NCBI RefSeq assembly: GCF_000315625.1
Contig: NW_005434673.1
Span: forward strand, 825,023 to 889,022
DNA from: Guillardia theta CCMP2712
Taxonomy: Eukaryota; Protista; Cryptophyta
Direction: 5' to 3'
DNA length: 64,000 nt
In this document: positions 32,242 to 56,670 of the stretch, piece after piece
Layout of the letters: each line of letters opens with the position of its first letter
Position numbering within the stretch: position 1 is the first letter of the stretch
Translations under genes and position numbers: made by a program
Notes under the pieces: generated by a model
The model's input: only the letters and a program-made list of their open reading frames with translations
Told to the model about the DNA's origin: nothing
Databases searched by the model: none

Positions 32242-33826
32242 ATGGCGATGGAGCTCCAAACTACACTGAAGATTGCGTGAGTATTGATCTTGGGGAGCCT
32301 GTCCATCCATATCTTGTGATCAAGCTTCTTCTTGTAGTTGTCTGCAGCTTGCATGCGGTACAAACAAGAAGGCCAACATTGAGAATGCTGCGGCAAAGAT
32401 CGCTGCTGCTTCAAAGCAAGGTGCAGAGATCATCGTGCTTCCGGTAGGCGCACTTAGAACGATCTGGTCGACAAGTTGTCACTGTTGCATCTCAGGAGTG
32501 TTTCAACTCTCCGTATGGAACGAAATATTTCCCGGAATATGCAGAGAATGTCATTGAAGGTGGTGTCGCAGTCGCTGGAGCCTTTGGGAGACGACTCACA
32601 TGAGATGTTCTAGGTCAGTCAGAAACTGCTCTTATGCTATCAACAGCTGCTCGAGACAATAAGGTGTGTGTTTTGGTTGAGGTCGGCAAAGGGCAACGTG
32701 ACCGTCGTCGATAGGTCTTCATCGTCGGAGGATCTTTCCCGGAAAAGGAGGGCGAGAAGATATACAACAGGTTGTCTTTGTCTTTGTCGACAACAAACAG
32801 CACGTGTATCTCACTTTCTGAATGATTGAAAACAGTTGCTACATCTTCAACCGCGACGGCGATATGGTTGCAAGGCATCGCAAAGTAGTTTCCCCCTTGG
32901 ACATGATGTGGCTCTGTTGAGTTCGTATGACTCAGGTGCATCTCTTCGACATCGACATTCCTGGCAAGATAACTTTCAAGGAGTCTGACACCCTCTCGCC
33001 TGGAGATTGTCCTACCATTGTAGATCTCTCTGAACATGGTGAGTCTCCCCTAGCTCCTACAATTCTTTGATTTCCCATGGTTCTGTGCTGTATTAGGCGG
33101 GCCACCAGTTCGCATGGGAATCGGTAGGAGTAATTTCTTTCCTATCGATTTCTTTTGATGTAACGAGACAGGAATTTGTTATGACATTCGCTTTCCTGAG
33201 CTTGCTCTGCTATATCGGCATCTCGGTCAGGTGCTCTCTGACACACTCTGCCGTCTGAGCACTTGTTCGTCTCCAGGTTGTAGCATGCTCGTTTACCCAG
33301 GAGCATTCAACATGGTCACTGGACCCGCTCACTGGGAGCTGCTTCTGAGGGCTCGCGCTGTGGATACCCAGGTGAAGAAAGTAAGGAAGATGTCTGTCGT
33401 GAACCGAGCCATGTGCTGCAGTCTTTCGGGATTGTTTGTTCCCCAGCAAGGGACGAGTCTGCAGACTACATCGCCTGGGGACACTCGATGATTGTCGACC
33501 CATGGGGGGAAAAGGTCTTCTTCCCCTCCAGACTTTGTTCAGTGGGGTAATCCGAATGGCCAGCTCGGTGAACTGCAGGAGAAAGAAGACATCTTGATGG
33601 TAGACTTGGATCTTACGCAGGTTGATTGGGAGGGGACCATGTTGTTGCTGCGAACGTAAAGCTTGCCAAGGTGGTTTCTCGCCGCCAGAACATGCCATAT
33701 TGGTTGCAGAGGCGACAGGATATCTACAAGGTGACAAGTGCAGCTGAAGGAGGATTGATGATGATGCTTTCGCTTCAGTTGTCTTCTCCGTTTATGCCGG
33801 AAAAGAAGCCAAGCCCGGACAAGTGA
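32242..33826 (+). CDS. NIT2: Omega-amidase NIT2 (carbon-nitrogen hydrolase), multi-exon
   Basis: Spliced exons give GAEIIVLP|[21 protein letters not shown]|[65 protein letters not shown] and RRQDIY. Confidence 0.93.
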
Positions 33827-33929
33827 GCGAGTCAGGATCACAGTTGGGGATCTTCGATTTATTGATATCATCCACTGGCTCTTGAGCAAAATCTACATAA
33901 GAAAAACGAGCAACTTCCTCCATCAGACT

Positions 33930-34258
33930 CCAGGCTGCGCAGCAGCATGCCCTCCGGACCAGCGCAGCGAATGACGAGGCTGACTCATATGGTCTCCAGC
34001 TTGAAGTTGGAAGGAAGGGAGATAAACTTGTCCTGCTCCACTCTGGCATGGGCTGCCGCTTCTTCCGCGGTCCATGGATGTTGGAGGAGGTCGTCATCGT
34101 CCGAGGGGCAAGAAGCCGTGCTGAGACCGTCTGCTGACTTGAGAGACGCAGAGCTGGGGGTGTTGGGCCTTCCTTGAGGGAAGAGAACTTGCTGCCAGCT
34201 GAGAGCGTCATGGAGGTCGTCAAAGGGGACGGAGATCGGCGGCGAGATGATGGGGCAT
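33930..34258 (-). pseudogene. Small LSWQHVLFP-family gene, MPHHL subtype, pseudogene
   Basis: Inverted copy of 39183-39572 with a 5-bp net deletion near the ATG, a CGA>TGA stop at 33985 and a 3' truncation. Confidence 0.8.
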
Positions 34259-34459
34259 GGCGGCAAGGAGCGAAGGAATGAGAAGTGAGGGGGATGCTAG
34301 AAAGGTGGACCGGGGCGGGGCTGGGGAGAGAGATAGGGGTGGGGGTCACCGGGTGGGGTGGGTTGAAGGGGAGGGCATGAAGATTGGCAGGTTACCAAGA
34401 GGTCCGCGTATTGTAGCATCGAGCCTTACAGTGTGCTCCTGACCCCTTCCTCCTCCTCC

Positions 34460-34625
34460 ATGTCTGCACTCTCTCGCCCCTCCGCCGGCATTCCACAACA
34501 AGACCTCGTCTCCGATCCTGTCCCTGAGCAAGATATCGTCGACAGCCTCTCTTGGCAGCACGTCCTCTTCCCTGATGGACACCTCGCATCCCGGGCCTCC
34601 AGCTTCGCGTCACCAGGAGTTTCCG
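34460..34625 (+). pseudogene. Truncated LSWQHVLFP-family gene, MSALS subtype fragment
   Basis: Matches the first 51 codons of 37021-36542 in inverted orientation, then breaks off. Confidence 0.75.
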
Positions 34626-34747
34626 GAACTCATGGGCGCCTGCGGGCGGCCCATCGGGAAGAGCGCGGCCTCCCACGCCAGGGCCTCCTCGGGCTCCTGG
34701 CTGCCTTCCATCTTGAGCTCCAGTGCGATCTCAGTCTCGAGTGCCAT
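34609..34747 (-). pseudogene. Truncated LAWEAALFP (MALET subtype) fragment
   Basis: MALETEIALELKMEGSQEPEEALAWEAALFPMGRPQA followed by a premature end. Confidence 0.75.
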
Positions 34748-35024
34748 CGTGCGGGCTGAGATCAAGTAAACACCATTACATCTTAGCAAAGCACCTTTCG
34801 ATTCATGGATGTACTTCCAACGTCCAAAGAGACAAAACGATTTTTATCACCAGATTCGATCCTACCTTCATCCCCACTGCTCAGGATGCTGAGGACATGA
34901 TTGCGGAGTTCTACCGAAGTTCTATTGAATTACCACGTAATGTCCCAAGGCCAGACCAAGGCAGCTCAGACACAGCACACAGACAAACGATCACCATTTG
35001 ATGCAACAAACAATCATCTCATCA

Positions 35025-35339
35025 ATGGGTTTCATCAATCAGCCCCTCCCCGATCAAGACCTTGCTGATAGTCTCTCCTGGCAACACGTTCTCTTCCCCG
35101 CCCCAGGGCTCGTATCCCCCTCTCCAAGCTGCTCATCGCTCAAGTCGTTGGTCGCTAGCTCCTTGGACGAGGACGAGATCGCCGACGAGGGGAGTGAGGC
35201 TGACGGAAGCGAGAGAGGAGCGATGGCTAGGAGCACAAGAGCAAAGGTCGGCGAGCCGAGTACACCAACAGCAATATCTCATCACGTTGCACAAGAAAAT
35301 GTCAACTTGATGGGAGCAAAGTGTCAATCATTACTTTAA
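35025..35339 (+). pseudogene. Truncated LSWQHVLFP-family gene, fragment of the 37396 subtype
   Basis: 35036-35246 nearly identical to 37429-37639. Lacks the C-terminal ISLP and MLL boxes. Confidence 0.7.
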
Positions 35340-35405
35340 TTATTTTACAGAAGCAAGCCTTAAGGTATTCTTGATGTTTGATTATATATCTCTTGAAACA
35401 GCCAT

Positions 35406-35894
35406 TTACGCGTTAACTCCGACATCATTGAGATCCAAACCCTGTCGTTTTACCATGGCATGTTCTAGTGCTCTTAGGAGCATTCCCTGCTCTCCTTCAA
35501 CTTTGATCGCATATCTTGGTCTACGTTTTTCGAATTTGAAGTTCCTTGGAAGTGAGATGTACTTTTTCAGAGGCCCCTGTACTAGCCCATCCTGGCAGTC
35601 ATGCATGTAACCTGCCCGACTGCACGAAACCATGCAGCTATCTCTGACTCCATGATTACGAGCCGCTCCTTGTTCTTCACACTTGCTAGTCTCAGAGAAC
35701 TCCTGGTGCTCGTGATCGGCTTCCTCTTCCTCCGAGCTGCTCTCCACCAACGACTTGAGCGACCCGAAGCTGGAGGCCCGGGATGCGAGGTGTCCATCAG
35801 GGAAGAGGACGTGCTGCCAAGAGAGGCTGTCGGCGATATCTTGCTCAGGAACAGGATCGGTAGCGATATCGCTGGAGGTTCCGGAATGTGCCAT
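35406..35894 (-). CDS. Small intronless LSWQHVLFP-family protein (162 aa, MAHSG subtype)
   Basis: DSLSWQHVLFPDG, acidic linker, YISLPRNFKFE, GEQGMLLRALEHAM. Confidence 0.75.
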   Translation of the reverse strand: MAHSGTSSDIATDPVPEQDIADSLSWQHVLFPDGHLASRASSFGSLKSLVESSSEEEEADHEHQEFSETSKCEEQGAARNHGVRDSCMVSCSRAGYMHDCQDGLVQGPLKKYISLPRNFKFEKRRPRYAIKVEGEQGMLLRALEHAMVKRQGLDLNDVGVNA

Positions 35895-36541
35895 GGGTGG
35901 TTGACTGGAGGTGCTGGCCAAGCTCACGAGGAGGGGAGAAATAACGAGGAATTGGGGGAAGGGAATGGGGCGGAACGAAATGATTATATGAAAAATCACA
36001 TCCTTTGAAATTTGGTGGAGTCCGTGAACAGGCATAATACTGCGTTTGAAGGTATGGGGCCCATAAATAAATTCTGGATTCTTCTTCCCGCAATAAATCT
36101 TCCAAAATATTTCTTTTCAGATCTGAGCGCGTTTTTGTCGCATGACAGGCACTACTGGTCACGGAATTTTTTTGCAGTGACTCAGCGGGTTAAGAAGTCG
36201 GAATGATTTTGCTGTCCCTGGAATATCGTATATAACACTTGAGGTGGGCCTGTCTGTCCTCCTGCCTGCCTGTCGGACGAGCTCGCACGAATGGACTTTG
36301 AGTAAAGATCTGGTTGATCATGATGATTTACTAGTGAGTTCCATATTGTAGCAAAACGATTTTGAATGATTTATCTGAAGGAACGTAAAGCTAGCCAAAC
36401 CTTCTGGCAATCAAACGCAGAAAAATGGCGATGCAATGCCGCACACAGCTTGAGTTTCCTCAGAAGCATTCATTACTTCAAGTAATCTTAGTTTTGTCAT
36501 TTACAAAATCAACAAAGATGAACAAATATAGAGTCCATTTT

Positions 36542-37021
36542 TCACTCGTTCTTCAAGATAACGCCTCTTTTCTTCATGGCATCCCTCAGACTCCCCAGCA
36601 GCATCCCCTCCTTCCCTTCAGCCTTCACCACCTGGCTTCGTCGCCTTCCTTCCAACCTCACTTCCCTCGGAAGCGATATCCAGATCTCCTCGCCCCGGGC
36701 AGAGATCTCTGTCGTGCTGTCATCACAGCTGATGTCCAACATCGATTGTCCTCCTGCTCCTCTCGGGCCGCGGGATCCTCCACCCTCCGCCGCCCCTTCA
36801 TCAGCCAGATCGTCTTGACCTTGATAATCCTCCTCTTCCTCCGAGCTGCTCTCCACCAACGACTTGAGCGATGCGAAGCTGGAGGCCCGGGATGCGAGGT
36901 GTCCATCAGGGAAGAGGACGTGCTGCCAAGAGAGGCTGTCGACGATATCTTGCTCAGGAACAGGATCGGAGACGAGGTCTTGTTGTGGAATGCCGGCGGA
37001 GGGGCGAGAGAGTGCAGACAT
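36542..37021 (-). CDS. Small intronless LSWQHVLFP-family protein (159 aa, MSALS subtype)
   Basis: DSLSWQHVLFPDG, WISLPREVRLE, GKEGMLLGSLRDAM. TATAA-like motif about 45 bp upstream. Confidence 0.75.
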   Translation of the reverse strand: MSALSRPSAGIPQQDLVSDPVPEQDIVDSLSWQHVLFPDGHLASRASSFASLKSLVESSSEEEEDYQGQDDLADEGAAEGGGSRGPRGAGGQSMLDISCDDSTTEISARGEEIWISLPREVRLEGRRRSQVVKAEGKEGMLLGSLRDAMKKRGVILKNE

Positions 37022-37395
37022 GGAGGAGGAGGAAGGGGTCAGGAGCACACTGTAAGGCTCGATGTTATAGCGGGGCACGAGGGGGACAGGGGAACTGAGA
37101 TGACATCTAGACTGTTCGAATTCCCTTATTTCTCAACGTTTCGGATCTGCAAATGCGGTGACTCGTGACTTGGGGGAGAAAACTGGTCGCAAAGGAGACG
37201 GAATTCTCTTACGCGATATAATGACTGGCTTCGGCTAGCGGGACCGATTCAGTTGCAAGTATCGAGAATCTTCCATGTATCTCAACAAACAGATACGTAT
37301 CGTGGTAACCTGACCAGGATGCTGTTGATGTTCCCATATCAACAGATCCTCCCCAATCAATACGACAGCGACACTTTTCGAAAGACCTGGTCGCA

Positions 37396-37911
37396 ATGTC
37401 TTCCAACATGGTGGAAGCAGAGCTTCTGAATCAGCCCCTCCCCGATCAAGACCTTGCTGATAGTCTCTCCTGGCAACACGTTCTCTTCCCCGCCCCAGGG
37501 CTCGTATCCCCCTCTCCAAGCTGCTCATCGCTCAAGTCGTTGGTCGCTGGCTCCTTGGACGAGGACGAGATCGCCGACGAGGGGAGTGAGGCTGACGGAA
37601 GCGAGAGAGGAGCGGTGGCTAGGAGCACAAGAGCAAAGTCGAGTACACCTGCAGCAGGAATGGTTGACCTGGGCCTGGGGGGAGCACTAGATGATGAGCG
37701 TCCAGAGCTAGGAATAAGATGGATCTCCCCCCCAAGACATGTAAGATGGATCTCCCTCCCAAGACAGCCGAGGCTCAGAGCAGATGACGTCAGCAAGCAG
37801 TGGATGCTTCTCCAAAGCCTCCATCAGGCAATCGAAAAGTATCTCGCAAGAAGTGGCGCAGGTGAAGCGCCCAACTTACGGGTCAATAGCTCCATACTGC
37901 CACGTCCATGA
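37396..37911 (+). CDS. Small intronless LSWQHVLFP-family protein (171 aa, MSSNM subtype)
   Basis: DSLSWQHVLFP, duplicated RWIS(P/L)P box, WMLLQSLHQAI. Confidence 0.72.
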   Translation: MSSNMVEAELLNQPLPDQDLADSLSWQHVLFPAPGLVSPSPSCSSLKSLVAGSLDEDEIADEGSEADGSERGAVARSTRAKSSTPAAGMVDLGLGGALDDERPELGIRWISPPRHVRWISLPRQPRLRADDVSKQWMLLQSLHQAIEKYLARSGAGEAPNLRVNSSILPRP

Positions 37912-38187
37912 ATGATTCCTGAGTCACCAGCCAGCCCATGCTGCAAGGGACCTTTTCCAGTTTTGTCCCGTGTTACCTTTGCCGGATAACTGGGAAGAAG
38001 TTTTGGGCATTTTAATGCTATTTGAAATGAATTCAACATCTTTTTTAAGGAGTCGAACCCATCGAGCGGAGTGCTCGCATGTGTATACCATGTTCAATCA
38101 CACGGCATGCTCTACTCGCTGGATACTTCATGAGCATACTCTTTGCAGCGGGCGCGTTGCGAACACAACCAGGTCATGCTAGACAAT

Positions 38188-38577
38188 TCATTGCATACTC
38201 AATGACTTCAGATGACTCAACGAGGCTTTCCTCTCCCGTTCCTTCCGGGCTACATCACAAAGGCTCTGCAGAAGCAGGCCGTCGTTTCCCTTTCTTTTCT
38301 TCGCGTGGTTGTGAGCAGAGATCTCGAAACTGAAGTTCATAGGGAGGGAGATACAGGGCGGTGACGCAATGCCTTCTGACCGGCGGATTCTCTTCTGCGC
38401 TCGCTGCTCTCGATGATCTTTTGAAGCAATGCAAGGGCGTGACAAGTTGACTTGTTGGCTATCAGACAAAGAAAGAGTCGCAAGCTTGATCCCACACGTT
38501 TCTGGAGCGAAGATGAAGGCGGAGGACCTTTGGCTTTGAGGGGGCTGAACTGATGGTGCGGCAATCCCAACCGACAT
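38188..38577 (-). CDS. Divergent family member lacking the Trp box (129 aa, MSVGI subtype)
   Basis: Retains CISLPMNFSFE and GNDGLLLQSLCDVA boxes. Confidence 0.6.
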   Translation of the reverse strand: MSVGIAAPSVQPPQSQRSSAFIFAPETCGIKLATLSLSDSQQVNLSRPCIASKDHREQRAQKRIRRSEGIASPPCISLPMNFSFEISAHNHAKKRKGNDGLLLQSLCDVARKERERKASLSHLKSLSMQ

Positions 38578-39182
38578 GTCACCCAGCCGGAGGTAGCGGA
38601 ATACGAGATGAGATGCCCACAGAAAGACCCGGGGCAACAACAGAGGCCGGGAAAAGCGAGACAAGGAAGCGAAGGAGCGGAGGGAGGTATGTATGGGGCA
38701 ATGAAAGGGAGTAAAGGGGAAGGGGAAGTGGAAGGGAGAGGAAAAATTGAACAAAGGGATGAGTACAGGGGGATGAAAATGGAGGGATAAGAAGCAAGAA
38801 ACGACTACAGGGGAATGAAGGGGAGGGATGCTGGCCTTGTTGTTTCCTCTGCAGGTAGGCGAGGAACGATGCACACACAAAGCAGGCGAGGAGGCTGCCC
38901 AAGTGGAGTCCGTGATTGCCCGCTAACGAACGTTCCCAAGTTGATATCAAACGCTGCCATAACACATCGTTTGGTTTCATCATATGGCCCCTTGTGTGTT
39001 GTAATATGACCCCTTCGGGCTTCCCCCCATTCCCCCCCCTCTGTCCACCCCCTTCGATGGTTTCCTGCCCTAAGCAAGCGGGAGCATAGTCCATTGTGGT
39101 GACCGACCTCCCCCTCCCACGCGACTCTCCTCCTCTTGTCTCACCTTACCCGTCCACTCTTATTCCTTCGCTCCTTGCCGCC

Positions 39183-39572
39183 ATGCCCCATCATCTCGGT
39201 TTAGCGCCGATCTCCGTCCCTCTTGACGACCTCCATGACGCTCTCAGCTGGCAGCACGTTCTCTTCCCTCAAGGAAGGCCCAACACCCCCAGCTCTGCGT
39301 CTCTCAAGTCAGCAGACGGTCTCAGCACGGCTTCTTGCCCCTCGGACGATGACGACCTCCTCCAACATCCATGGACCGCGGAAGAAGCGGCAGTCCACGC
39401 CAGGGTGGAGCAGGACAAGTTTATCTCCCTTCCTTCCAACTTCAAGCTGGAGACCAGACGAGTCAGCCTCGTCATTCGCTGCGCTGGTCCGGAGGGCATG
39501 CTGCTGCGCAGCCTGGAGGAGGCTCTGCACAAGCATGGTGGCTCCTTCTTCGAGACGGAGGCTGGAGAGTGA
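39183..39572 (+). CDS. Small intronless LSWQHVLFP-family protein (129 aa, MPHHL subtype)
   Basis: DALSWQHVLFPQG, FISLPSNFKLE, GPEGMLLRSLEEAL. Confidence 0.75.
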   Translation: MPHHLGLAPISVPLDDLHDALSWQHVLFPQGRPNTPSSASLKSADGLSTASCPSDDDDLLQHPWTAEEAAVHARVEQDKFISLPSNFKLETRRVSLVIRCAGPEGMLLRSLEEALHKHGGSFFETEAGE

Positions 39573-39785
39573 GCCAACTGCTTGGCGACAAGTGTTTCTC
39601 AAAGCATGATATCGTAACGGTTGATCATGACAGAGATGTTTCTAAGGCTGTAGTGGATGCTGTAGAGATCCGGTGAGGATCAAGTCTGATGGAGGAAGTT
39701 GCTCGTTTTTCTTATGTAGATTTTGCTCAAGAGCCAGTGGATGATATCAATAAATCGAAGATCCCCAAATGTGATCCTGACTCGC

Positions 39786-40300
39786 TCACTTGTCCGGGCT
39801 TGGCTTCTTTTCCGGCATAAACGGAGAAGACAACTGAAGCGAAAGCATCATCATCACTCCTCCTTCAGCTGCACTTGTCACCTTGTAGATATCCTGTCGC
39901 CTCTGCAACCAATATGGCATGTTTTGGCGGCGAGAAACCACCTTGGCAAGCATAACGTTTGCAGCAACAACATGGTCCCCTCCCAATCAACCTGCGTAAG
40001 ATCCAAGTCTACCATCAAGATGTCTTCTTTCTCCTGCAGTTCACCGAGCTGGCCATTCGGATTACCCCACTGAACAAAGTCTGGAGGGGAAGAGGACCTT
40101 TTCTCCCCATAGGTCGACAATCATCGAGTGTCCCCAGGCGATGTAGTCTGCAGACTCGTCCCTTGCTGGGGAACAAACAATCCCGAAAGACTGCAGCACA
40201 TGGCTCGGTTCACGACAGACATCTTCCTTACTTTCTTCACCTGGGTATCCACAGCGCGAGCCCTCAGAAGCAGCTCCCAGTGAGCGGGTCCAGTGACCAT
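39786..40300 (-). pseudogene. Duplicated 3' fragment of NIT2 (inverted)
   Basis: 39683-40300 is the reverse complement of 33312-33929 with few substitutions and introns retained. The 5' part of the gene is missing. Confidence 0.9.
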
Positions 40301-40371
40301 TTATTTACATCTCTATATCTACATCAGTCTTACATCTCCCCCTCCCCATTCTTCTTCTCCCCCTTCCTCCT

Positions 40372-40698
40372 TCACTCTTGAGCCCCCCGGCCGCTCCTCA
40401 GCGACTGCCTCCTCATCGCCTCCTCGATCGACCTCAACAGCATCCCCTCCTTCCCCGTCCCTCTGATCGCCCGGCTCCTCTGCCTCGCCTCAAGCTTGAA
40501 GCCCGTCGGATACGAGATCCCCCACGCCTCTCCTTCCTCGTCCCTCTCCGCCAACGCCGCTGCCTCCTTTCCTGTCGCGACCTTGGACGCCTGCGGGCGG
40601 CCCCTCGGGAAGAGCGCGGCCTCCCACGCCAGGGCCTCCTCGGGCTCCTGGCTGCCTTCCGTCTTGAGCTCCAGTGCGATCTCAGTCTCGAGTGCCAT
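40372..40698 (-). CDS. Small family protein, MALET subtype (108 aa), array unit 1
   Basis: EALAWEAALFPRG, GISYPTGFKLE, GKEGMLLRSIEEAM. Confidence 0.75.
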   Translation of the reverse strand: MALETEIALELKTEGSQEPEEALAWEAALFPRGRPQASKVATGKEAAALAERDEEGEAWGISYPTGFKLEARQRSRAIRGTGKEGMLLRSIEEAMRRQSLRSGRGAQE

Positions 40699-41061
40699 CC
40701 TGCTTGCCTTGATGTGTGTGTGTGTGCGGCCGAGCACAAGGGGGCAGGAAATAAGTAAAGGGGCATGGGGAGGGGGACGGCCCAGCTTCTCCGTGACCAT
40801 GCCGAGGTATGTAGTAAAGATATCTCATGCGACCGACCCCTTATCAGCAAGTCACGCTACACCACGGCCTTCGGTCACGTCATACCAGGGCCTTGGATAC
40901 CGCGTAACAGGCAAGTGGGTCGTGAAGTGTAGGACGGCTTTGCTGCCTTGTGTTGGGTAGCTATCGCTTGACTGAGGCGAGCTGGCTTTCGACCCCCCTC
41001 CCGAATCCAAAAACCTTGCTGCCCCGGATATCCTCCCGACACTCGTTGGCCAGGGGTGAGC
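40699..41061. promoter_or_regulatory. Putative bidirectional promoter shared by the MALET/MSNIL pair, repeated in each array unit
   Basis: 363 bp between divergent ATGs. GTCACG/CGTGAC at 40792, 40851 and 40874, plus CGTGA at 40921. Confidence 0.5.
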
Positions 41062-41448
41062 ATGTCTAACATCCTTGCTCTTGCGTCCGACCCCGTTCCT
41101 TCAGACGAGCTGCAAGGCGGGCTGTCGTGGCAGCATGTGCTGTTCCCTGTCGGCCGAAGCCCATCCCCGACCTCGTCGTCCAAATCAGTAGGAGAGGGCG
41201 AGAGCGATTGCTCAACGGAATCTTCGTCGGAGGACACAGACGACGAAGACCAAGTGAGAGAGAGGGGCCGGGGGCTTGCTGATGGCATACAGCTCGACGT
41301 GATCGAGCCGAGATGGATATCGCTTCCGACTTGCTTCATCTTGGAACCGAGACCCCGGAGCCTAGCAATCCGTACCCAAGGACGAGAGGACATGCTGCTG
41401 CGGAGCTTACAGGAGGCAGTGTCGAGGTACGGGAGAGTGCGGGGTTGA
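41062..41448 (+). CDS. Small family protein, MSNIL subtype (128 aa), array unit 1
   Basis: GGLSWQHVLFPVG, SPSPTSS/acidic linker, WISLPTCFILE, GREDMLLRSLQEAV. Confidence 0.75.
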   Translation: MSNILALASDPVPSDELQGGLSWQHVLFPVGRSPSPTSSSKSVGEGESDCSTESSSEDTDDEDQVRERGRGLADGIQLDVIEPRWISLPTCFILEPRPRSLAIRTQGREDMLLRSLQEAVSRYGRVRG

Positions 41449-42106
41449 GTAGGGCGTCATCGCGAGACGACAAGAGAGCAAGGCTTGCAGCTGACATCAA
41501 GGAGGTGCCCCCCCACATGTCATTTTGCTTGTCAATACAAGAGCACGAAACCTGAGATCGACTGATTTTGTTGAGTTTGTCACGACATGAGCATAGCGCG
41601 ATGGTCTTTGTTTCGAGATAGGTATGAGATCCAAGCTTGTATCGCATCAGACCCTAGAGTCTATCTCAAGCTCATGCTACACGTGCCCGCCAATGCACCT
41701 CGCTCCAACGACCGTGGCATGCCAGCCAGAAAGAAGATGCTTCGAGCTCACGATGAAGGGAAGACTAGAGTCCCAGGAGGCCCAGGCGAGGGAGGCAACG
41801 ATGATGCGATGTGGGAGAGGTGAAGATGCACGTGCGGATGAGGGCCTCGATGTGAGTTCTACTTGCTCATCGGCGGGGAGCGTTTGTAGGAAACGTGACT
41901 TCATCGGCACTGATTGTCGTGCTACACCACCGTGCACAGCACGGGAATGATCACTTAGGGATAGCACCGTATGAATGCGGAGCGCACAAACCATGACAAG
42001 AGTCACTTCTTCTGTCTTGATGATGATCAGCCTCTTTATTTACATCTCTATATCTACATCAGTCTTACATCTCCCCCTCCCCATTCTTCTTCTCCCCCTT
42101 CCTCCT

Positions 42107-42433
42107 TCACTCTTGAGCCCCCCGGCCGCTCCTCAGCGACTGCCTCCTCATCGCCTCCTCGATCGACCTCAGCAGCATCCCCTCCTTCCCCGTCCCTCTG
42201 ATCGCCCGGCTCCTCTGCCTCGCCTCAAGCTTGAAGCCCGTCGGATACGAGATCCCCCACGCCTCTCCTTCCTCGTCCCTCTCCGCCAACGCCGCTGCCT
42301 CCTTTCCTGTCGCGACCTTGGACGCCTGCGGGCGGCCCCTCGGGAAGAGCGCGGCCTCCCACGCCAGGGCCTCCTCGGGCTCCTGGCTGCCTTCCGTCTT
42401 GAGCTCCAGTGCGATCTCAGTCTCGAGTGCCAT
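42107..42433 (-). CDS. MALET subtype, array unit 2
   Basis: Same protein sequence as 40372-40698. Confidence 0.75.
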   Translation of the reverse strand: MALETEIALELKTEGSQEPEEALAWEAALFPRGRPQASKVATGKEAAALAERDEEGEAWGISYPTGFKLEARQRSRAIRGTGKEGMLLRSIEEAMRRQSLRSGRGAQE

Positions 42434-42796
42434 CCTGCTTGCCTTGATGTGTGTGTGTGTGCGGCCGAGCACAAGGGGGCAGGAAATAAGTAAAGGGGCA
42501 TGGGGAGGGGGACGGCCCAGCTTCTCCGTGACCATGCCGAGGTATGTAGTAAAGATATCTCATGCGACCGACCCCTTATCAGCAAGTCACGCTACACCAC
42601 GGCCTTCGGTCACGTCATACCAGGGCCTTGGATACCGCGTAACAGGCAAGTGGGTCGTGAAGTGTAGGACGGCTTTGCTGCCTTGTGTTGGGTAGCTATC
42701 GCTTGACTGAGGCGAGCTGGCTTTCGACCCCCCTCCCGAATCCAAAAACCTTGCTGCCCCGGATATCCTCCCGACACTCGTTGGCCAGGGGTGAGC

Positions 42797-43183
42797 ATGT
42801 CCAACATCCTTGCTCTTGCGTCCGACCCCGTTCCTCCAGACGAGCTGCAAGGCGGGCTGTCGTGGCAGCATGTGCTGTTCCCTGTCGGCCGAAGCCCATC
42901 CCCGACCTCGTCGTCCAAATCAGTAGGAGATGGCGAGAGCGATTGCTCAACGGAATCTTCGTCGGAGGACACAGACGACGAAGACCAAGTGAGAGAGAGG
43001 GGCCGGGGGCTTGCTGATGGCATACAGCTCGACGTGATCGAGCCGAGATGGATATCGCTTCCGACTTGCTTCATCTTGGAACCGAGACCCCGGAGCCTAG
43101 CAATCCGTATCCAAGGACGAGAGGACATGCTGCTGCGGAGCTTACAGGAGGCAGTGTCGAGGTACGGGAGAGTGCGGGGTTGA
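42797..43183 (+). CDS. MSNIL subtype, array unit 2
   Basis: Three amino-acid differences from 41062-41448. Confidence 0.75.
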   Translation: MSNILALASDPVPPDELQGGLSWQHVLFPVGRSPSPTSSSKSVGDGESDCSTESSSEDTDDEDQVRERGRGLADGIQLDVIEPRWISLPTCFILEPRPRSLAIRIQGREDMLLRSLQEAVSRYGRVRG

Positions 43184-43800
43184 GTAGGGCGTCATCGCGA
43201 GACGACAAGAGAGCAAGGCTTGCAGCTGACGTCAAGGAGGTGCCCCCCCCACATGTCATTTTGCTTGTCAATACAAGAGCACGAAACCTGAGACCGACTG
43301 ATTTTGTTGAGTTTGTCACGACATGAGCATAGCGCGATGGTCTTTGTTTCGAGATAGGTATGAGATCCAAGCTTGTATCGCATCAGACCCTAGAGTCTAT
43401 CTCAAGCTCATGCTACACGTGCCCGCCAATGCACCTCGCTCCAACGACCGTGGCATGCCAGCCAGAAAGAAGATGCTTCGAGCTCACGATGGAGGGAAGA
43501 CTAGAGTCCGAGGAGGCCCAGGCGAGGGAGGCAACGATGATGCGATGTGGGAGAGGTGAAGATGCACGTGCGGATGAGGGCCTCGATGTGAGTTCTACTT
43601 GCTCATCGGCGGGGAGCGTTTGTAGGAAACGTGACTTCATCGGCACTGATTGTCACGCTACACCACCGTGCACAGCACGGGAATGATCACTTAGGGATAG
43701 CACCGTATGAATGCGGAGCGCACAAACCATGACAAGAGTCACTTCTTCTGTCTTGATGATGATCAGCCTCTTTATTTACATCTCTATATCTACATCAGTC

Positions 43801-44145
43801 TTACATCTCCCCCTCCCCATTCTTCTTCTCCCCCTTCCTCCCCCTCAGCGACTGCCTCCTCATCGCCTCCTCGATCGACCTCAGCAGCATCCCCTCCTTC
43901 CCCGTCCCTCTGATCGCCCGGCTCCTCTGCCTCGCCTCAAGCTTGAAGCCCGTCGGATACGAGATCCCCCACGCCTCTCCTTCCTCGTCCCTCTCCGCCA
44001 ACGCCGCTGCCTCCTTTCCTGTCGCGACCTTGGACGCCTGCGGGCGGCCCCTCGGGAAGAGCGCGGCCTCCCACGCCAGGGCCTCCTCGGGCTCCTGGCT
44101 GCCTTCCGTCTTGAGCTCCAGTGCGATCTCAGTCTCGAGTGCCAT
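43801..44145 (-). CDS. MALET subtype, array unit 3, altered C-terminus
   Basis: A small deletion removes the normal stop, giving the tail RGRKGEKKNGEGEM. Confidence 0.6.
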   Translation of the reverse strand: MALETEIALELKTEGSQEPEEALAWEAALFPRGRPQASKVATGKEAAALAERDEEGEAWGISYPTGFKLEARQRSRAIRGTGKEGMLLRSIEEAMRRQSLRGRKGEKKNGEGEM

Positions 44146-44366
44146 CCTGCGGTGCCTTGATGTGTGTGTGTGCGGCCGAGCACAAGGGGGCAGGAAATAA
44201 GTAAAGGGGCATGGGGAGGGGGACGGCCCAGCTTCTCCGTGACCATGCCGAGGTATGTAGTAAAGATATCTCATGCGACCGACCCCTTATCAGCAAGTCA
44301 CGCTACACCACGGCCTTCGGTCACGTCATACCAGGGCCTTGGATACCGCGTAACAGGCAAGTGGGT

Positions 44367-44702
44367 CAAGGCGGGCTGTCGTGGCAGCATGTGCTGTTCC
44401 CTGTCGGCCGAAGCCCATCCCCGACCTCGTCGTCCAAATCAGTAGGAGATGGCGAGAGCGATTGCTCAACGGAATCTTCGTCGGAGGACACAGACGACGA
44501 AGACCAAGTGAGAGAGAGGGGCCGGGGGCTTGCTGATGGCATACAGCTCGACGTGATCGAGCCGAGATGGATATCGCTTCCGACTGGCTTCATCTTGGAA
44601 CCGAGACCCCGGAGCCTAGCAATCCGTATCCAAGGACGAGAGGACATGCTGCTGCGGAGCTTACAGGAGGCAGTGTCGAGGTACGGGAGAGTGCGGGGTT
44701 GA
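44367..44702 (+). pseudogene. MSNIL subtype lacking its start (deletion junction ..aagtgggt|caaggcgggctg..)
   Basis: A deletion of about 190 bp relative to units 1 and 2 removes half the promoter and the ATG. An upstream in-frame ATG exists at 44211. Confidence 0.6.
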
Positions 44703-45469
44703 GTAGGGCGTCATCGCGAGACGACAAGAGAGCAACAATGGAAGACTGATGTAGATATAAAGATCAAAATATAGAGGCTGATAATCGTGAAGACAGAAGA
44801 AGTGGATCATGTCATGGTTTGTTTTTCCTGATGGCGACTGTGCCTCCTGATGAACTCCCGATATGATAAATTCGCCCATCCTCCAACTGTGTCCCAGGAA
44901 CAAGGCAATCCATCCAGCTTTCTGGAGGCGAGCGCTCCGCATTCATACGGTGCTATCCCTAAGTGATCATTCCCGTGCTGTGCACGGTAGTGTAGCGTGA
45001 CAATCAGTGCCGATGAAGTCACGTTTCCTACAAACGCTCCCCGCCGATGAGCAAGTAGAACTCACATCGAGGCCCTCATCCGCACGTGCATCTTCACCTC
45101 TCCCACATCGCATCATCGTTGCCTCCCTCGCCTGGGCCTCCTCGGACTCTAGTCTTCCCTCCATCGTGANNNNNNNNNNNNNNNNNNNNNNNNNNNNNNN
45201 NNNNNNNNNNNNNNNNNNNNNNNNNNNNNNNNNNNNNNNNNNNNNNNNNNNNNNNNNNNNNNNNNNNNNNNNNNNNNNNNNNNNNNNNNNNNNNNNNNNN
45301 NNNNNNNNNNNNNNNNNNNNNNNNNNNNNNNNNNNNNNNNNNNNNNNNNNNNNNNNNNNNNNNNNNNNNNNNNNNNNNNNNNNNNNNNNNNNNNNNNNNN
45401 NNNNNNNNNNNNNNNNNNNNNNNNNNNNNNNNNNNNNNNNNCTCTTGTCGTCTCGCGATGACGCCCTAC

Positions 45470-45702
45470 TCAACCCCGCACTCTCCCGTACCTCGACACT
45501 GCCTCCTGTAAGCTCCGCAGCAGCATGNNNNNNNNNNNNNNNNNNNNNNNNNNNNNNNNNNNNNNNNNNNNNNNNNNNNNNNNNNNNNNNNNNNNNNNNN
45601 NNNNNNNNNNNNNNNNNNNNNNNNNNNGCGACATCGACAGCCCCCTTTGCAGCTCGTCTGGAGGAAACGGGGTCCGGACGCAAGAGCAAGCATGTTGATC
45701 AT
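45470..45702 (-). CDS. MSNIL subtype, inverted arm, interrupted by an assembly gap
   Basis: C-terminal MLLRSLQEAVSRYGRVRG and an error-rich N-terminal read end flank the N run 45528-45627. A second gap lies at 45170-45441. Confidence 0.5.
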
Positions 45703-46066
45703 GCCTCACCCCTGGCCATCGAGTGTCGGGAGGATATCCGGGGCAGCAAGGTTTTTCGATTCGAGAGGGGGGTCGAAAGCCAGCTCGCCTCACTCAAGCG
45801 ATAGCTACCCAACACAAGGCAGCAAAGCCCGTCCTACACTTCACGACCCACTTGCCTGTTACGCGGTATCCAAGGCCCTGGTATGACGTGACCGAAGGCC
45901 GTGGTGTAGCGTGACTTGCTGATAAGGGGTCGGTCGCATGAGATATCTTTACTACATACCTCGGCATGGTCACGGAGAAGCTGGGCCGTCCCCCTCCCCA
46001 TGCCCCTTTACTTATTTCCTGCCCCCTTGTGCTCGGCCGCACACACACACATCAAGGCACCGCAGG

Positions 46067-46390
46067 ATGGCACTCGAGACTGAGATCGCACTGGAGCTCA
46101 AGACGGAAGGCAGCCAGGAGCCCGAGGAGGCCCTGGCGTGGGAGGCCGCGCTCTTCCCGAGGGGCCGCCCGCAGGCGTCCAAGGTCGCGACAGGAAAGGA
46201 GGCAGCGGCGTTGGCGGAGAGGGACGAGGAAGGAGAGGCGTGGGGGATCTCGTATCCGACGGGCTTCAAGCTTGAGGCGAGGCAGAGGAGCCGGGCGATC
46301 AGAGGGACGGGGAAGGAGGGGATGCTGCTGAGGTCGATCGAGGAGGCGATGACAGAAGAAGTGGATCATGTCATGGTTTGTTTTTCCTGA
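46067..46390 (+). CDS. MALET subtype, inverted arm, 3' end replaced by a deletion junction
   Basis: Identical up to EEAM, then TEEVDHVMVCFS from spacer sequence. Confidence 0.6.
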   Translation: MALETEIALELKTEGSQEPEEALAWEAALFPRGRPQASKVATGKEAAALAERDEEGEAWGISYPTGFKLEARQRSRAIRGTGKEGMLLRSIEEAMTEEVDHVMVCFS

Positions 46391-47028
46391 TGGCGACTGT
46401 GCCTCCTGATGAACTCCCGATATGATAAATTCGCCCATCCTCCAACTGTGTCCCAGGAACAAGGCAATCCATCCAGCTTTCTGGAGGCGAGCGCTCCGCA
46501 TTCATACGGTGCTATCCCTAAGTGATCATTCCCGTGCTGTGCACGGTAGTGTAGCGTGACAATCAGTGCCGATGAAGTCACGTTTCCTACAAACGCTCCC
46601 CGCCGATGAGCAAGTAGAACTCACATCGAGGCCCTCATCCGCACGTGCATCTTCACCTCTCCCACATCGCATCATCGTTGCCTCCCTCGCCTGGGCCTCC
46701 TCGGACTCTAGTCTTCCCTCCATCGTGAGCTCGAAGCATCTTCTTTCTGGCTGGCATGCCACGGTCGTTGGAGCGAGGTGCATTGGCGGGCACGTGTAGC
46801 ATGAGCTTGAGATAGACTCTAGGGTCTGATGCGATACAAGCTTGGATCTCATACCTATCTCGAAACAAAGACCATCGCGCTATGCTCATGTCGTGACAAA
46901 CTCAACAAAATCAGTCGGTCTCAGGTTTCGTGCTCTTGTATTGACAAGCAAAATGACATGTGGGGGGGGCACCTCCTTGACGTCAGCTGCAAGCCTTGCT
47001 CTCTTGTCGTCTCGCGATGACGCCCTAC

Positions 47029-47415
47029 TCAACCCCGCACTCTCCCGTACCTCGACACTGCCTCCTGTAAGCTCCGCAGCAGCATGTCCTCTCGTCCTTG
47101 GATACGGATTGCTAGGCTCCGGGGTCTCGGTTCCAAGATGAAGCAAGTCGGAAGCGATATCCATCTCGGCTCGATCACGTCGAGCTGTATGCCATCAGCA
47201 AGCCCCCGGCCCCTCTCTCTCACTTGGTCTTCGTCGTCTGTGTCCTCCGACGAAGATTCCGTTGAGCAATCGCTCTCGCCATCTCCTACTGATTTGGACG
47301 ACGAGGTCGGGGATGGGCTTCGGCCGACAGGGAACAGCACATGCTGCCACGACAGCCCGCCTTGCAGCTCGTCTGGAGGAACGGGGTCGGACGCAAGAGC
47401 AAGGATGTTGGACAT
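47029..47415 (-). CDS. MSNIL subtype, inverted arm
   Basis: Same protein sequence as 42797-43183. Confidence 0.75.
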   Translation of the reverse strand: MSNILALASDPVPPDELQGGLSWQHVLFPVGRSPSPTSSSKSVGDGESDCSTESSSEDTDDEDQVRERGRGLADGIQLDVIEPRWISLPTCFILEPRPRSLAIRIQGREDMLLRSLQEAVSRYGRVRG

Positions 47416-47777
47416 GCTCACCCCTGGCCAACGAGTGTCGGGAGGATATCCGGGGCAGCAAGGTTTTTGGATTCGGGAGGGGGGTCGAAAGCCAGCTCGC
47501 CTCACTCAAGCGATAGCTACCCAACACAAGGCAGCAAAGCCGTCCTACACTTCACGACCCACTTGCCTGTTACGCGGTATCCAAGGCCCTGGTATGACGT
47601 GACCGAAGGCCGTGGTGTAGCGTGACTTGCTGATAAGGGGTCGGTCGCATGAGATATCTTTACTACATACCTCGGCATGGTCACGGAGAAGCTGGGCCGT
47701 CCCCCTCCCCATGCCCCTTTACTTATTTCCTGCCCCCTTGTGCTCGGCCGCACACACACACATCAAGGCACCGCAGG

Positions 47778-48104
47778 ATGGCACTCGAGACTGAGATCGC
47801 ACTGGAGCTCAAGACGGAAGGCAGCCAGGAGCCCGAGGAGGCCCTGGCGTGGGAGGCCGCGCTCTTCCCGAGGGGCCGCCCGCAGGCGTCCAAGGTCGCG
47901 ACAGGAAAGGAGGCAGCGGCGTTGGCGGAGAGGGACGAGGAAGGAGAGGCGTGGGGGATCTCGTATCCGACGGGCTTCAAGCTTGAGGCGAGGCAGAGGA
48001 GCCGGGCGATCAGAGGGACGGGGAAGGAGGGGATGCTGCTGAGGTCGATCGAGGAGGCGATGAGGAGGCAGTCGCTGAGGGGCGGCCGGGGGGCTCAAGA
48101 GTGA
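47778..48104 (+). CDS. MALET subtype, inverted arm
   Basis: 108 aa, one substitution relative to 40372-40698. Confidence 0.75.
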   Translation: MALETEIALELKTEGSQEPEEALAWEAALFPRGRPQASKVATGKEAAALAERDEEGEAWGISYPTGFKLEARQRSRAIRGTGKEGMLLRSIEEAMRRQSLRGGRGAQE

Positions 48105-48916
48105 AGGAGGAAGGGGGAGAAGAAGAATGGGGAGGGGGAGATGTAAGACTGATGTAGATATAGAGATGTAAATAAAGAGGCTGATCATCATGAAGACTGA
48201 GATGCGAGTTCTTTCACACCCACACCATGTTGTTTCCTACCTCGTACCCTTTCTCTTTGTCCATGTGATTTTCTTCGTTGTTGTGTAAGTTTTTCCTTCT
48301 GCTAACTTTTCCTGTTTCATGTGTTTTGTATGTGAACTAGATCTTCTTACAAACGTCGGCAATTCCATCAGCGAACTGAGACGCCATCGGTGCTGTTACG
48401 GCAAGCTGACTCATACAGCACACCACAATGCGTCTTGTCTCTCAGCGGTCTTGTTTCCTTTCTGCAGTCTGCTGCGCTGCTATGCCCAGCCGCATGCCAA
48501 CCTCTTGAGAGTCAACCTACCCATCTTCGCTCTTGTTCTGGCCCTCTGCTTCCTACATCATCGTCCTGCTCCTACTCGTTCCCCTTCACAGGCTCTCACC
48601 TCGCTGCTGCTCCTTGTGCTCAATTCTTGATTTGGTTCTTCCCTTCACCCTTCTCCTCCCATCCCTTCTCATCACGAGCTCCTGACGCTTTTTGCGGAGC
48701 AGGAATCTTCCATTGCTCTCTTGGGGCTAGGAGGTTGACCAGACTCTTGGTGGAGCTAACAGCGAAGTGACAAGTGTCGACGCTGACGAAGCGCAGGAGT
48801 GATCATGCTCAACATCTACCTCGGGTCTCAACCGTGGCGATCTCTCCTCGTTCTTCTGGTACTCGGAGGGATAGAGGAGGTTGTGTTGCTGACGTGATTG
48901 TATCTCCCTGCCAAAG

Positions 48917-54364: not shown

Positions 54365-54698
54365 GCGCTTCACGTGCAGAGTACCCGTGGTCAGTGAGGA
54401 GATGAGGGTCCTTGTCTCCAAGAGCCTGAGAGTGCGGGCCCGTACCGTACGGACCGCGGCGATCGGATCGGACAGTGAGGCCCGGCGGGCCGGGGCCAGG
54501 CAGCTCTGCGGATCGGATCGTTGGCCGGGCCGCGAGACGCCGGACGAATCAAGGCATGAGGATGCGGGCCTCAGTAACTCAGTTGGGTACAACTTGAGAT
54601 GAAAGTTCATTCCGACTGTCAAGTTCACTGTGACAGCCGAACTTCGGAAGTTGGGCCTTGGCCCGGCGGCCTCAAGTACGGTAGCCAGAGACGGATCC

Positions 54699-56670
54699 TC
54701 AGCAGCATCCTCCTCCACTGCAGCATCCTCCACCAGAAGCATCAGCAGCAGCTTCAGCCGGCTTGATCGCAGGGGACGGCCCGCCTATTAGCAGAGAAGG
54801 TCAGATTGAAAGTTGCTGAGCTTATAGAAGTTGAGCTTACAGGGGAATTCACCGTAGTGAACTGATCTGTCCCTGTTCTCGACGCATCAGGCAACGGAGG
54901 GCTTCAAGGCGGGCATAAGTTACCCGAGAATCTCAAAGTGAGGGGCGAGCCAGCTTACTCCGTTCTCTCCTGTGGAGGCAATCTCAGTCTACCTCCTCCT
55001 TGCTCAGCTTCTCTGGCTTCACTCACCCAGCATCGCCGCAGTGTTCCCACAGACCAGGCTGAGCTTGCCCTTCTCGAAGAGGTGGTGATCGTCGAGCATG
55101 TAGGAGTGCTCCATTCCTTTGATAGTTCCCTTGTACCTCACAGCCTGCATCGGAGGAAGCTTCAACATTTGAAGGCCAGAGATCGCACTTGAGCACTCGC
55201 CTGGCCATAGTCTTCACATAGTGTCTCAAGCATCCCCTCAGGAAGCTTGAAGAGGCGGTAGGTGATTGAGAAGAACTTCGCTTCACCCAAGATGGCCTTC
55301 AGCTCGGGGTCATGAACTTCGATAGGAGCCTTGAAACCAAGATTAGCATGCGTCTGTAAAAGCATGTACCGCCACTCACAGACGAGAGAATTCTGGGGTC
55401 GCCAAATCCAGCCGCTCTGGCGTATCGAATGAAATCATTGGTGTAGAGGGCGCCTGCGATGCACTCGCCCCAGCTACATGCCAGTCAGCTGGGAGTTTCC
55501 ACATTCGCTGTGGGACATACAGGACTTCATGCTCTTGGACGTTCTTTGGAAGTCTACGATCACAGTAGACGTCGGAGAAATAAAACTCGCCTCCCGGTTT
55601 CAGGACGCGGTACACTTCCCTGAAGAAACCGCAGACACGGTCAGTCAAAGAGCAAACCAGGTATCATGGCATCACCTCAGCACTCGAGGCTTGTCAGGGG
55701 ATAGGTTGACTACACAGTTGCTGATCACAAGCTGCGCAACAACGTTCAGTGCTGATGGCACGCGGAGTTAACATTGAATACATCAAAAGTGTTGGCCTGG
55801 ATGCCAGCTTCTTCTAGACGTTCGATGTATCCTTCCACGAAGTTGAGGTTGCAACGATCATACCTGCACAGTGCAACTGGCATCAGAGTGCAAGTCTTGT
55901 TTCCAGGCGGCAGCCAAAACACAACTGGCAAAAGTTTATCACTGTACCCGAGTGACTTGCAGTACTGCTCCGCATGGGCCCTAGCCACCGAGAGCTGCTC
56001 CGCTGTCATGTCGATTCCTGCATCACAGAACTTCAGCAACCCCCAGCTTCTTGTAGACTATCGCAACTTACCAACAACAGAGCCAGTCGGTCCGACGAGA
56101 GCAGCTGCAGCATAACAATCCCTTCCTGAGCCGCTCCCTAGGTCAAGAACAGATCGCCCTTGAAATGGCACGAGCTCAACTCAGACGGGTCGCTTCTGTC
56201 ATACTGCATGTACCTTCGATGCCCAGAGGAAGAGGAGCTCCGCATCCATAGAACTTTTCACGGACCTAACAATGCTTTCACCACTAGCCATTCTCCTCTG
56301 AACAGGCTATCAACCTCCTTGGGGATTGAGCGGATAACTTTCGCCTTCAAGAAAAGATCCAAGTCAGGAGCAACTATCTCAGGCAGGAAGAGCAGCATCA
56401 CCACAACGGGATGGGGACGACCACTCGCTGTGCATGCTGAAGTCTTCAGATCCTTGCTGGTGTGGAGCACCTGCGGACGAATCAGCGATCACCCATGGAT
56501 GTTCCCATCAAAACACCTTGCCATAGTAGTCCTTCACGGACTCCAACGTCTGCAGAGCACGAAAGAGGTCAGCAGATGGAAAAACTTTCGCTCTACACGC
56601 ATGCCAGGCAGTAATCCTCACTGAATCCACTGGGACCGTTAGTCGCATCCAAGGATATCCTTCACCCATT
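54699..56670 (-). CDS. AS3MT: Arsenite S-adenosylmethionine methyltransferase, multi-exon
   Basis: VKDYYGK|[74 protein letters not shown]-terminus [11 protein letters not shown]. Start approximate. Confidence 0.92.

What the first reader, a model, noticed from the sequence alone, without database searches (positions are those of the whole stretch)
33930..48104. Cluster of about 19 loci of an unrecognised small intronless protein family (LSWQHVLFP ... ISLP..F.LE ... EGMLLRSL)
Seen: seven distinct subtypes of 108-171 aa (starting MAHSG, MSALS, MSSNM, MSVGI, MPHHL, MALET, MSNIL) share three short boxes. Box 1 is L[SA]W[QE]x[VA]LFP (absent in MSVGI), box 2 is IS[LY]PxxFx[LF]E, and box 3 is Gx[EQD]x[ML]LLx[SA][LI]xx[AV]. 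The Ser/Pro-rich and acidic linkers between them are unalignable and vary in length. About 11 copies look intact; the rest are truncated, chimeric or pseudogenised. All lack introns, whereas every recognisable neighbouring gene is spliced. Inference: box conservation across divergent DNA indicates purifying selection on real proteins. The layout (short linear motif, phosphorylatable/acidic disordered linker, small C-terminal fold) fits rapidly induced regulatory or stress proteins evolving by birth-and-death. I cannot assign it to a known family.
Basis: partly seen in the sequence, partly recalled or inferred. Interest (0 to 1): 0.88.

Follow-up and report, generated by a model that had tools for sequence, protein, structure and literature searches.

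The report
Undescribed cryptophyte small-protein gene cluster
A 14-kb stretch of the alga Guillardia theta holds 19 copies and fragments of real, transcribed, intron-free genes for small floppy proteins with one short conserved tail; the family is undescribed and so far found only in Guillardia and its sister genus Hanusia, and its job is not yet known.

Summary
Observation confirmed. The window is Guillardia theta nuclear DNA. It holds 19 loci in seven subtypes: 11 intact, 2 with altered tails, 5 broken and 1 across a gap. Only that one copy touches the gaps, so its state is unknown.

The genes are real. Five subtypes are covered by unspliced contigs from probable RNA runs. dN/dS against a wild Guillardia lineage is 0.46 (p=0.0025), and coding indels are in frame. 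Hanusia phi has three orthologues.

The family is wider than the cluster, with at least 14 more loci on eight scaffolds. Its true core is a fixed-spacing 26-residue tail: basic-Ser, strand-like LxIxC, GPxG, amphipathic helix. Box 1 is optional. Nothing matched in Pfam, NCBIfam, PHROGs, PDB, ESM Atlas or 1.8 billion proteins outside Guillardia/Hanusia, and there is no sign of transposon or viral origin.

Best reading (0.45): intracellular regulatory adaptors whose tail folds on a partner. Birth-and-death turnover is shown; stress induction is untested. The scan reported several similar Guillardia/Hanusia microprotein families on other DNA, and one may be the same superfamily.

The parts
33930..34266 (-). 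MPHHL-type pseudogene: 5-nt deletion near the start, in-frame TGA, 3' end lost
   Evidence: 96% to the 39183 copy; boundary
34460..34612 (+). 5' fragment of MSALS type (box 1 only)
34633..34747 (-). 5' fragment of MALET type (box 1 only)
35037..35246 (+). internal fragment of MSSNM type inside a chimeric ORF 35001-35339
35406..35894 (-). MAHSG gene, 162 aa, intact; its 5' part is 98% identical to MSALS (recent conversion or shuffling, inferred)
   Evidence: probable-RNA contigs 35354-35751 and 35815-35896
36542..37021 (-). MSALS gene, 159 aa, intact; orthologue in a wild Guillardia lineage (P0003)
37022..37395 (.). divergent intergenic region shared by MSALS and MSSNM; conserved in the wild lineage
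37396..37911 (+). MSSNM gene, 171 aa, degenerate boxes 2 and 3; the wild orthologue has a premature stop
   Evidence: (contig 37262-37958)
38188..38577 (-). MSVGI gene, 129 aa, lacks box 1, two NLS-like basic patches; Hanusia phi orthologue P0010
39183..39572 (+). MPHHL gene, 129 aa, intact, head-to-head with MSVGI
39683..40300 (-). inverted duplicate of 33312-33929 (3' exons of the neighbouring nitrilase-like gene), captured in the cluster
40372..40698 (-). MALET gene, 108 aa, in 1.7-kb unit 1
   Evidence: wild orthologue P0019
41062..41448 (+). MSNIL gene, 128 aa, unit 1, head-to-head with MALET
42107..42433 (-). MALET gene, unit 2
42797..43183 (+). MSNIL gene, unit 2
43480..43532 (+). old degenerate MALET-like relic (81% over 53 nt), repeated with the unit (also about 41744-41796, 45121-45169, 46680-46732)
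43801..44145 (-). MALET copy with all boxes and a replaced tail (114 aa)
44367..44702 (+). MSNIL copy that lost its first 17 codons and proximal upstream region by deletion
45470..45700 (-). MSNIL copy interrupted by the 100-N gap; integrity unknown
46067..46390 (+). MALET copy cut after the box-3 helix, new tail (107 aa)
47029..47415 (-). MSNIL gene, inverted unit
47778..48104 (+). MALET gene, inverted unit

Best explanation
SHOWN: a local expansion of an undescribed Guillardia/Hanusia family of intronless genes for 60-210 aa soluble proteins. Each has an acidic or Ser-rich variable N-terminal part, an optional short aromatic motif (WxxxLFPxG or FFxGxD), and a basic C-terminal module of fixed spacing, [RK]-S-L-x-I-x-C-x-G-P-x-G-M-L-L-x-[NS]-[LIV]-x-x-A-x-x-[KR]. 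The genes sit in head-to-head pairs. They multiply by local tandem and inverted duplication, are homogenised within a lineage, and die as pseudogenes. INFERRED: the proteins are intracellular (some probably nuclear) disordered regulators. The extended segment and amphipathic helix fold on binding a shared protein partner, box 1 is a second optional docking site, and the Ser after basic residues is a possible site for a basophilic kinase. Paralogues would tune one target under different conditions.
For: Transcripts: unspliced contigs bounded by the genes for five subtypes; a JGI contig over MPHHL and MALET skips a 50-nt GT-AG intron in the adjacent duplicate, so it is RNA. Selection: pooled dN/dS 0.46, p=0.0025; pN 0.11-0.27 against pS 0.57-0.79 in the boxes among paralogues; coding indels 3 of 3 in frame against 3 of 23 in non-coding DNA (one 7-nt gap at a stop codon was set aside as an alignment edge). 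Module: no indel in 21 of 22 members; LL 22/22, A 20/22, K/R 22/22, G 18/22, S 16/22; mean helical moment 0.49, above all 1000 shuffles (max 0.42). AF2: extended chain at pLDDT 76-89 with no self-contacts, plus one helix. No signal or membrane segment (max 15-residue hydropathy 1.3); NLS-like patches in 5 of 21. Window and dispersed members are one family: hhalign 96.9%, E 2e-10.
Against: No partner is known, and no protein-level or condition-resolved expression data were available. The RNA label of three runs is a guess by the tool, and the one raw RNA run gave only 45 short reads. AF2 ran on 21-28 sequences, so the lack of a fold is weak evidence. Only 12 of 22 members have the Ser with a basic residue at -2 or -3. 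No catalytic, DNA-binding or structural role was excluded by experiment.
Confidence: 0.45

Rival explanations
1. Stress-protective disordered proteins that work like dehydrins or LEA proteins: the amphipathic basic helix binds membranes or client proteins non-specifically, and the Ser/acidic tract is a phosphorylation site.
For: Disordered, hydrophilic, with conserved short segments in variable linkers; SSS-EEE tracts in MAHSG, MSALS and MSNIL; amphipathic helix; contig depth differs widely between runs.
Against: No Pfam dehydrin or LEA hit even at E 1. The helix is single, not repeated. The fixed-length LxIxCxGPxG segment fits specific docking better than bulk protection (inference).
Confidence: 0.17
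2. Small nucleic-acid-binding transcription regulators that dimerise through the strand, in the manner of a beta-ribbon plus helix; the head-to-head subtypes would form heterodimers.
For: Basic module with alternating hydrophobic residues; NLS-like patches in some members; divergent pairs of different subtypes, conserved in the wild lineage.
Against: No second helix as in ribbon-helix-helix proteins; no structural match. Partners of a pair differ about 9- to 30-fold in contig depth, although that is a poor measure of expression.
Confidence: 0.15
3. Regulators of one known kinase or phosphatase, of the PKI/AKAP or RCAN type. This is a special case of the best explanation.
For: RRxS-hydrophobic sites in several members. 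ISLP and SLxIxC loosely recall the calcineurin LxVP and PxIxIT motifs, and the helix recalls AKAP helices (resemblances from memory).
Against: The calcipressin HMM does not hit these loci. The motifs are short and low in information. Ser or Asn sits where AKAP helices have a hydrophobic residue (from memory).
Confidence: 0.12
4. Relics of a transposon or an endogenous virus.
For: Intronless in an intron-rich genome; repeats in both orientations.
Against: The 1.7-kb unit occurs only at this locus. Dispersed members share no flanking DNA with the cluster. No PHROG, Pfam or viral-contig match. Orthologues in Hanusia reach about 77-80% identity.
Confidence: 0.05
5. Non-functional ORFs carried along by local duplication.
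For: Several copies are broken, recent copies are 99% identical, and the wild MSSNM has a stop.
Against: dN/dS 0.46 with p=0.0025, in-frame indels, saturated synonymous sites in conserved boxes, transcripts, and orthologues in a second genus.
Confidence: 0.03

Closest known systems
Taxonomically restricted small intronless disordered regulators, e.g. plant VQ-motif and OVATE family proteins (general knowledge)
   Same: Intronless, small, variable disordered body with one short conserved motif that docks on a partner; expanded by duplication.
   Different: No sequence homology: no Pfam hit for any member, and the OVATE HMM PF04844 finds nothing in this genome. Different motif and lineage.
Dehydrins (K-, S-, Y-segments)
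   Same: Conserved short segments, including an amphipathic basic helix and a Ser/acidic tract, in unalignable linkers.
   Different: No K-segment, no repeats of the helix, no Pfam match; a Cys/Gly/Pro strand-turn segment precedes the helix.
RCAN/calcipressin (PF04847)
   Same: Disordered protein with an ISPP/ISLP-like word followed by a xxVxxC-like word.
   Different: The HMM does not hit these loci; the spacing is about 11 residues instead of about 40 (from memory); no RRM.
Other Guillardia/Hanusia microprotein families noted by this scan (s1-435488 with motif FVLxNILxAR; s1-430517; s1-437045; s1-434712)
   Same: Small, intronless, clustered, disordered, built on a conserved helix; 7 of 22 members here fit a loose [FMLT][VL]LxN[IVL]xxA pattern.
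   Different: These are AI notes, not literature. I could not fetch their sequences, so homology is untested.

Membership tests
Any Pfam-A family | HMM match at the gathering cut-off | tested here: not met
   nothing better than E 0.025, single members only
NCBIfam / PHROGs families | HMM match | tested here: not met
OVATE (PF04844) | 58-position C-terminal OVATE domain | tested here: not met
   no match in the genome
RCAN/calcipressin (PF04847) | HMM match with FLISPP and PxIxIT motifs | tested here: not met
   only E>=0.2 hits, at other places
RCAN/calcipressin (PF04847) | binds calcineurin | not testable with these tools
   needs a binding assay
Dehydrin / LEA | K-segment or LEA repeat by Pfam | tested here: not met
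Dehydrin / LEA | induced by water, cold or salt stress | not testable with these tools
   run conditions are coded
Ribbon-helix-helix DNA-binding proteins | strand followed by two helices, dimeric | tested here: not met
   one helix only; no structural match; dimer not modelled
AKAP / PKI | amphipathic helix or RRxA/S pseudosubstrate that binds PKA | tested here: inconclusive
   helix amphipathic; basic residues at both -2 and -3 of the Ser column in 8 of 22; binding untested
Transposable element | dispersed copies with shared ends, or a transposase/RT | tested here: not met
Secreted or plastid-targeted protein | N-terminal hydrophobic signal peptide | tested here: not met
   maximum 15-residue hydropathy 1.3, at the assumed starts

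The most novel reading that the evidence does not exclude
The cluster is one branch of a very large Guillardia/Hanusia superfamily of helix-motif microproteins (joining the other families this scan has noted) that acts as a combinatorial, phosphorylation-switched set of adaptors or inhibitors for one signalling or transcription hub: a regulatory layer not described in cryptophytes.
Probability: 0.15. Interest if true: 0.7.

Novelty: new member of a known kind. Interest (0 to 1): 0.33.

Why it matters
Cryptophyte gene regulation is little studied, and two of my literature searches found no paper on these genes. A selected, transcribed family of more than 30 loci with a 26-residue module is a defined bait for finding a regulatory hub. 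It is also a clear case of concerted plus birth-and-death evolution. Lineage-restricted small disordered protein families are common, however, and without a partner or phenotype this is a new family, not a new mechanism.

Tried and rejected
Pfam, NCBIfam, PHROGs and PDB sequence searches: blank. HMMER over 1.84 billion representatives found only Guillardia and Hanusia, plus one repetitive 637-aa protein (P0011) matching only 'NEGLLLRSI', rejected as a chance match; the profile came from the seven window subtypes, so distant cryptophyte members may be missed. Three word-based homologue searches added one Hanusia orthologue. ESM Atlas by features and by structure: no usable hit. Foldseek and VIA-align: best Z 2.5 at rmsd above 10. 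JGI metagenome and IMG/VR scans: nothing. Upstream element TGCGACC-N13/14-AAGTCACG is shared by two unalignable divergent promoters, but elsewhere in the genome it has 3 hits against 3 for the control, so I did not accept it as a regulon mark. TIFY, cyclin RxL, securin and FNR 'CGP' resemblances were considered from memory and dropped for lack of any profile support. The tree of the 55-aa module is mostly unresolved. No gap was bridged with reads, because the single read-laying run went to expression of 33900-39800.
Full report
Source. The window's genome has 87.1 Mb in 669 contigs, and database records of family members are named Guillardia theta CCMP2712. The window is nuclear DNA of this cryptophyte alga.

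Observation. A six-frame scan finds box 1 17 times, box 2 13 times and box 3 14 times, all within 33930-48104; 200 shuffles give none. tblastn with the seven subtypes yields 19 loci: 11 intact, two MALET copies with all boxes but replaced tails, five broken or truncated copies, and one MSNIL copy across a gap. The subtypes align at 20-49% identity to MAHSG. Self-comparison shows how the cluster arose. A 1.7-kb MALET/MSNIL head-to-head unit is repeated in tandem from 40300 and inverted at 46491-48176, at 95-99.7% identity. The left end (33930-35246) is a patchwork of fragments copied from the genes to the right. The 3' exons of the neighbouring nitrilase-like gene were duplicated in inverted form at 39683-40300.

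Gaps. The flanks of the 272-N gap map 273 nt apart in another copy of the unit, so that estimate is consistent. The flanks of the 100-N gap map about 256 nt apart, so it is a placeholder. The sequence beside it has single-base indels, as contig ends often do. Only one MSNIL copy is affected and its state cannot be told.

Are they genes? Contigs of three probable RNA runs cover MAHSG, MSALS, MSSNM, MSVGI and MPHHL without any splice joint and fall to zero at 34885-35278 and 36067-36263. In run X2, MSVGI and MPHHL are separate contigs; in X1 they are merged across the intergenic region. The RNA label is the tool's guess, and the one raw RNA run laid only 45 short reads. An independent JGI contig over MPHHL and MALET skips a 50-nt GT-AG intron in the adjacent nitrilase duplicate, so it derives from RNA. 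MSNIL is on record from MMETSP. Metagenome contigs from a wild Guillardia lineage, 86-92% identical, keep the MSALS/MSSNM and MALET/MSNIL pairs. Against them dN/dS is 0.53 for MSALS, 0.34 for MALET, and 0.46 pooled with MSNIL (Fisher p=0.0025). The three coding indels are all 3 nt, while 20 of 23 non-coding indels are not multiples of three. Among paralogues the boxes have pN 0.11-0.27 against pS 0.57-0.79.

Mode of evolution. The wild MALET/MSNIL contig is collinear with the tandem junction and has an exact 127-nt terminal overlap, the mark of a collapsed tandem repeat. Copies within CCMP2712 are 99-100% identical but 95% identical to the wild one. The array therefore predates the split and is homogenised within each lineage (inference: concerted evolution). 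The wild MSSNM has a premature stop, and the window holds pseudogenes and an older MALET relic, which is birth-and-death turnover.

Extent. Iterated profile searches of the genome found at least 14 further loci that I read: C148, C1 at 609 kb, four on C47, three on C15, two on C82, and one each on C81, C50 and C195, plus a gap-cut near-copy of the C82 gene on C4. A profile of the dispersed members alone recognises all window subtypes (hhalign 96.9%, E 2e-10). Outside G. theta I found only three Hanusia phi proteins: P0010 (MSVGI orthologue), P0012, and P0022 (77% identical to the C195 gene). [quoted passage not shown] Absence elsewhere is not proven, because the full HMMER search used the narrow seven-sequence profile.

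Anatomy. Across the wider family box 1 appears as WxxxLFPxG or FFxGxD, or is missing, and box 2 is loose. The constant part is a module with no indel in 21 of 22 members: basic residues, Ser (16/22), L-x-I-x-C, G (18/22), P-x-G, then LL (22/22), N/S (19/22), L/I/V (22/22), A (20/22) and K/R (22/22). The helix is more amphipathic than all 1000 shuffles. N-terminal parts are mostly acidic and C-terminal parts basic; none has a signal or membrane segment; 5 of 21 have NLS-like patches. AlphaFold2 models a full-length member as disordered with one C-terminal helix (pTM 0.25). It models the MPHHL tail as an extended chain plus helix 38-51 (mean pLDDT 76, pTM 0.32). No solved or predicted structure matches.

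Mechanism. A fixed-length strand-like segment, a Gly turn and an amphipathic helix that do not fold on themselves are most simply a motif that folds on a partner. I infer intracellular adaptors or inhibitors that share a target, with box 1 as an optional second contact and the basic-Ser site as a possible switch (confidence 0.45). The rivals are dehydrin-like protection (0.17), dimeric nucleic-acid binding (0.15), a PKA or phosphatase regulator as a special case (0.12), mobile-element origin (0.05) and non-function (0.03). Contig depths differ widely between runs and between pair partners, which fits differential regulation and argues against fixed 1:1 heterodimers, but contig depth is a poor measure.

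Comparison and novelty. No Pfam, NCBIfam, PHROGs or PDB sequence match; OVATE and calcipressin were tested directly and failed; no sign of a transposon or virus. Literature searches found no paper on these genes. In layout it resembles known kinds of lineage-restricted small disordered regulators without belonging to any. Earlier notes of this scan describe several similar Guillardia/Hanusia microprotein families on other scaffolds. One has the helix motif FVLxNILxAR, which resembles the helix here, but I could not test homology. Verdict: a real, undescribed, narrowly distributed gene family of unknown function; interest 0.33.

Noticed in passing
window 32350-33929 (+): Spliced nitrilase-like (NIT1/NIT2-type, judged from its translation) gene. 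In run X3 one 1591-nt contig runs from the duplicated 3' stretch into 33930-34304. If it is the nitrilase mRNA, its 3' end is antisense to the MPHHL pseudogene and 96% complementary to MPHHL, which has no contig in that run. Strand is not shown.
   Followed up: partly
window 39683-40300 (-): The inverted duplicate of the nitrilase 3' exons lies downstream of MALET; an RNA contig splices its 50-nt intron at 40191-40240. It could be an assembly merge with the original gene's mRNA.
   Followed up: partly
window 52232-54742 (-): DDX21/DDX50-like helicase (DEAD, Helicase_C, GUCT) in one uninterrupted frame, with an RRM-like stretch in another frame just downstream.
   Followed up: partly
window 37164-37191 and 40828-40856: TGCGACC-N13/14-AAGTCACG is shared by two otherwise unalignable divergent promoters and largely kept in the wild lineage (one of its four half-sites has a substitution); at background level elsewhere in the genome.
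   Followed up: yes
window 35722-35860 vs 36831-36969: MAHSG and MSALS share a 98% identical box-1 segment but have unrelated C-terminal halves, suggesting gene conversion or module shuffling between subtypes.
   Followed up: partly
L049:4593-4901 and P0012: This orthologous pair has Asp in place of the conserved Ser (KRND-L) in both Guillardia and Hanusia, as a fixed phosphomimetic would; speculative.
   Followed up: no
L077 (G000:C4:1204700-1204900) vs L074 (C82): A 99% identical copy of the C82 member on another scaffold, ending at a gap; a recent duplicate, an allele or an assembly duplicate.
   Followed up: no
   Followed up: no
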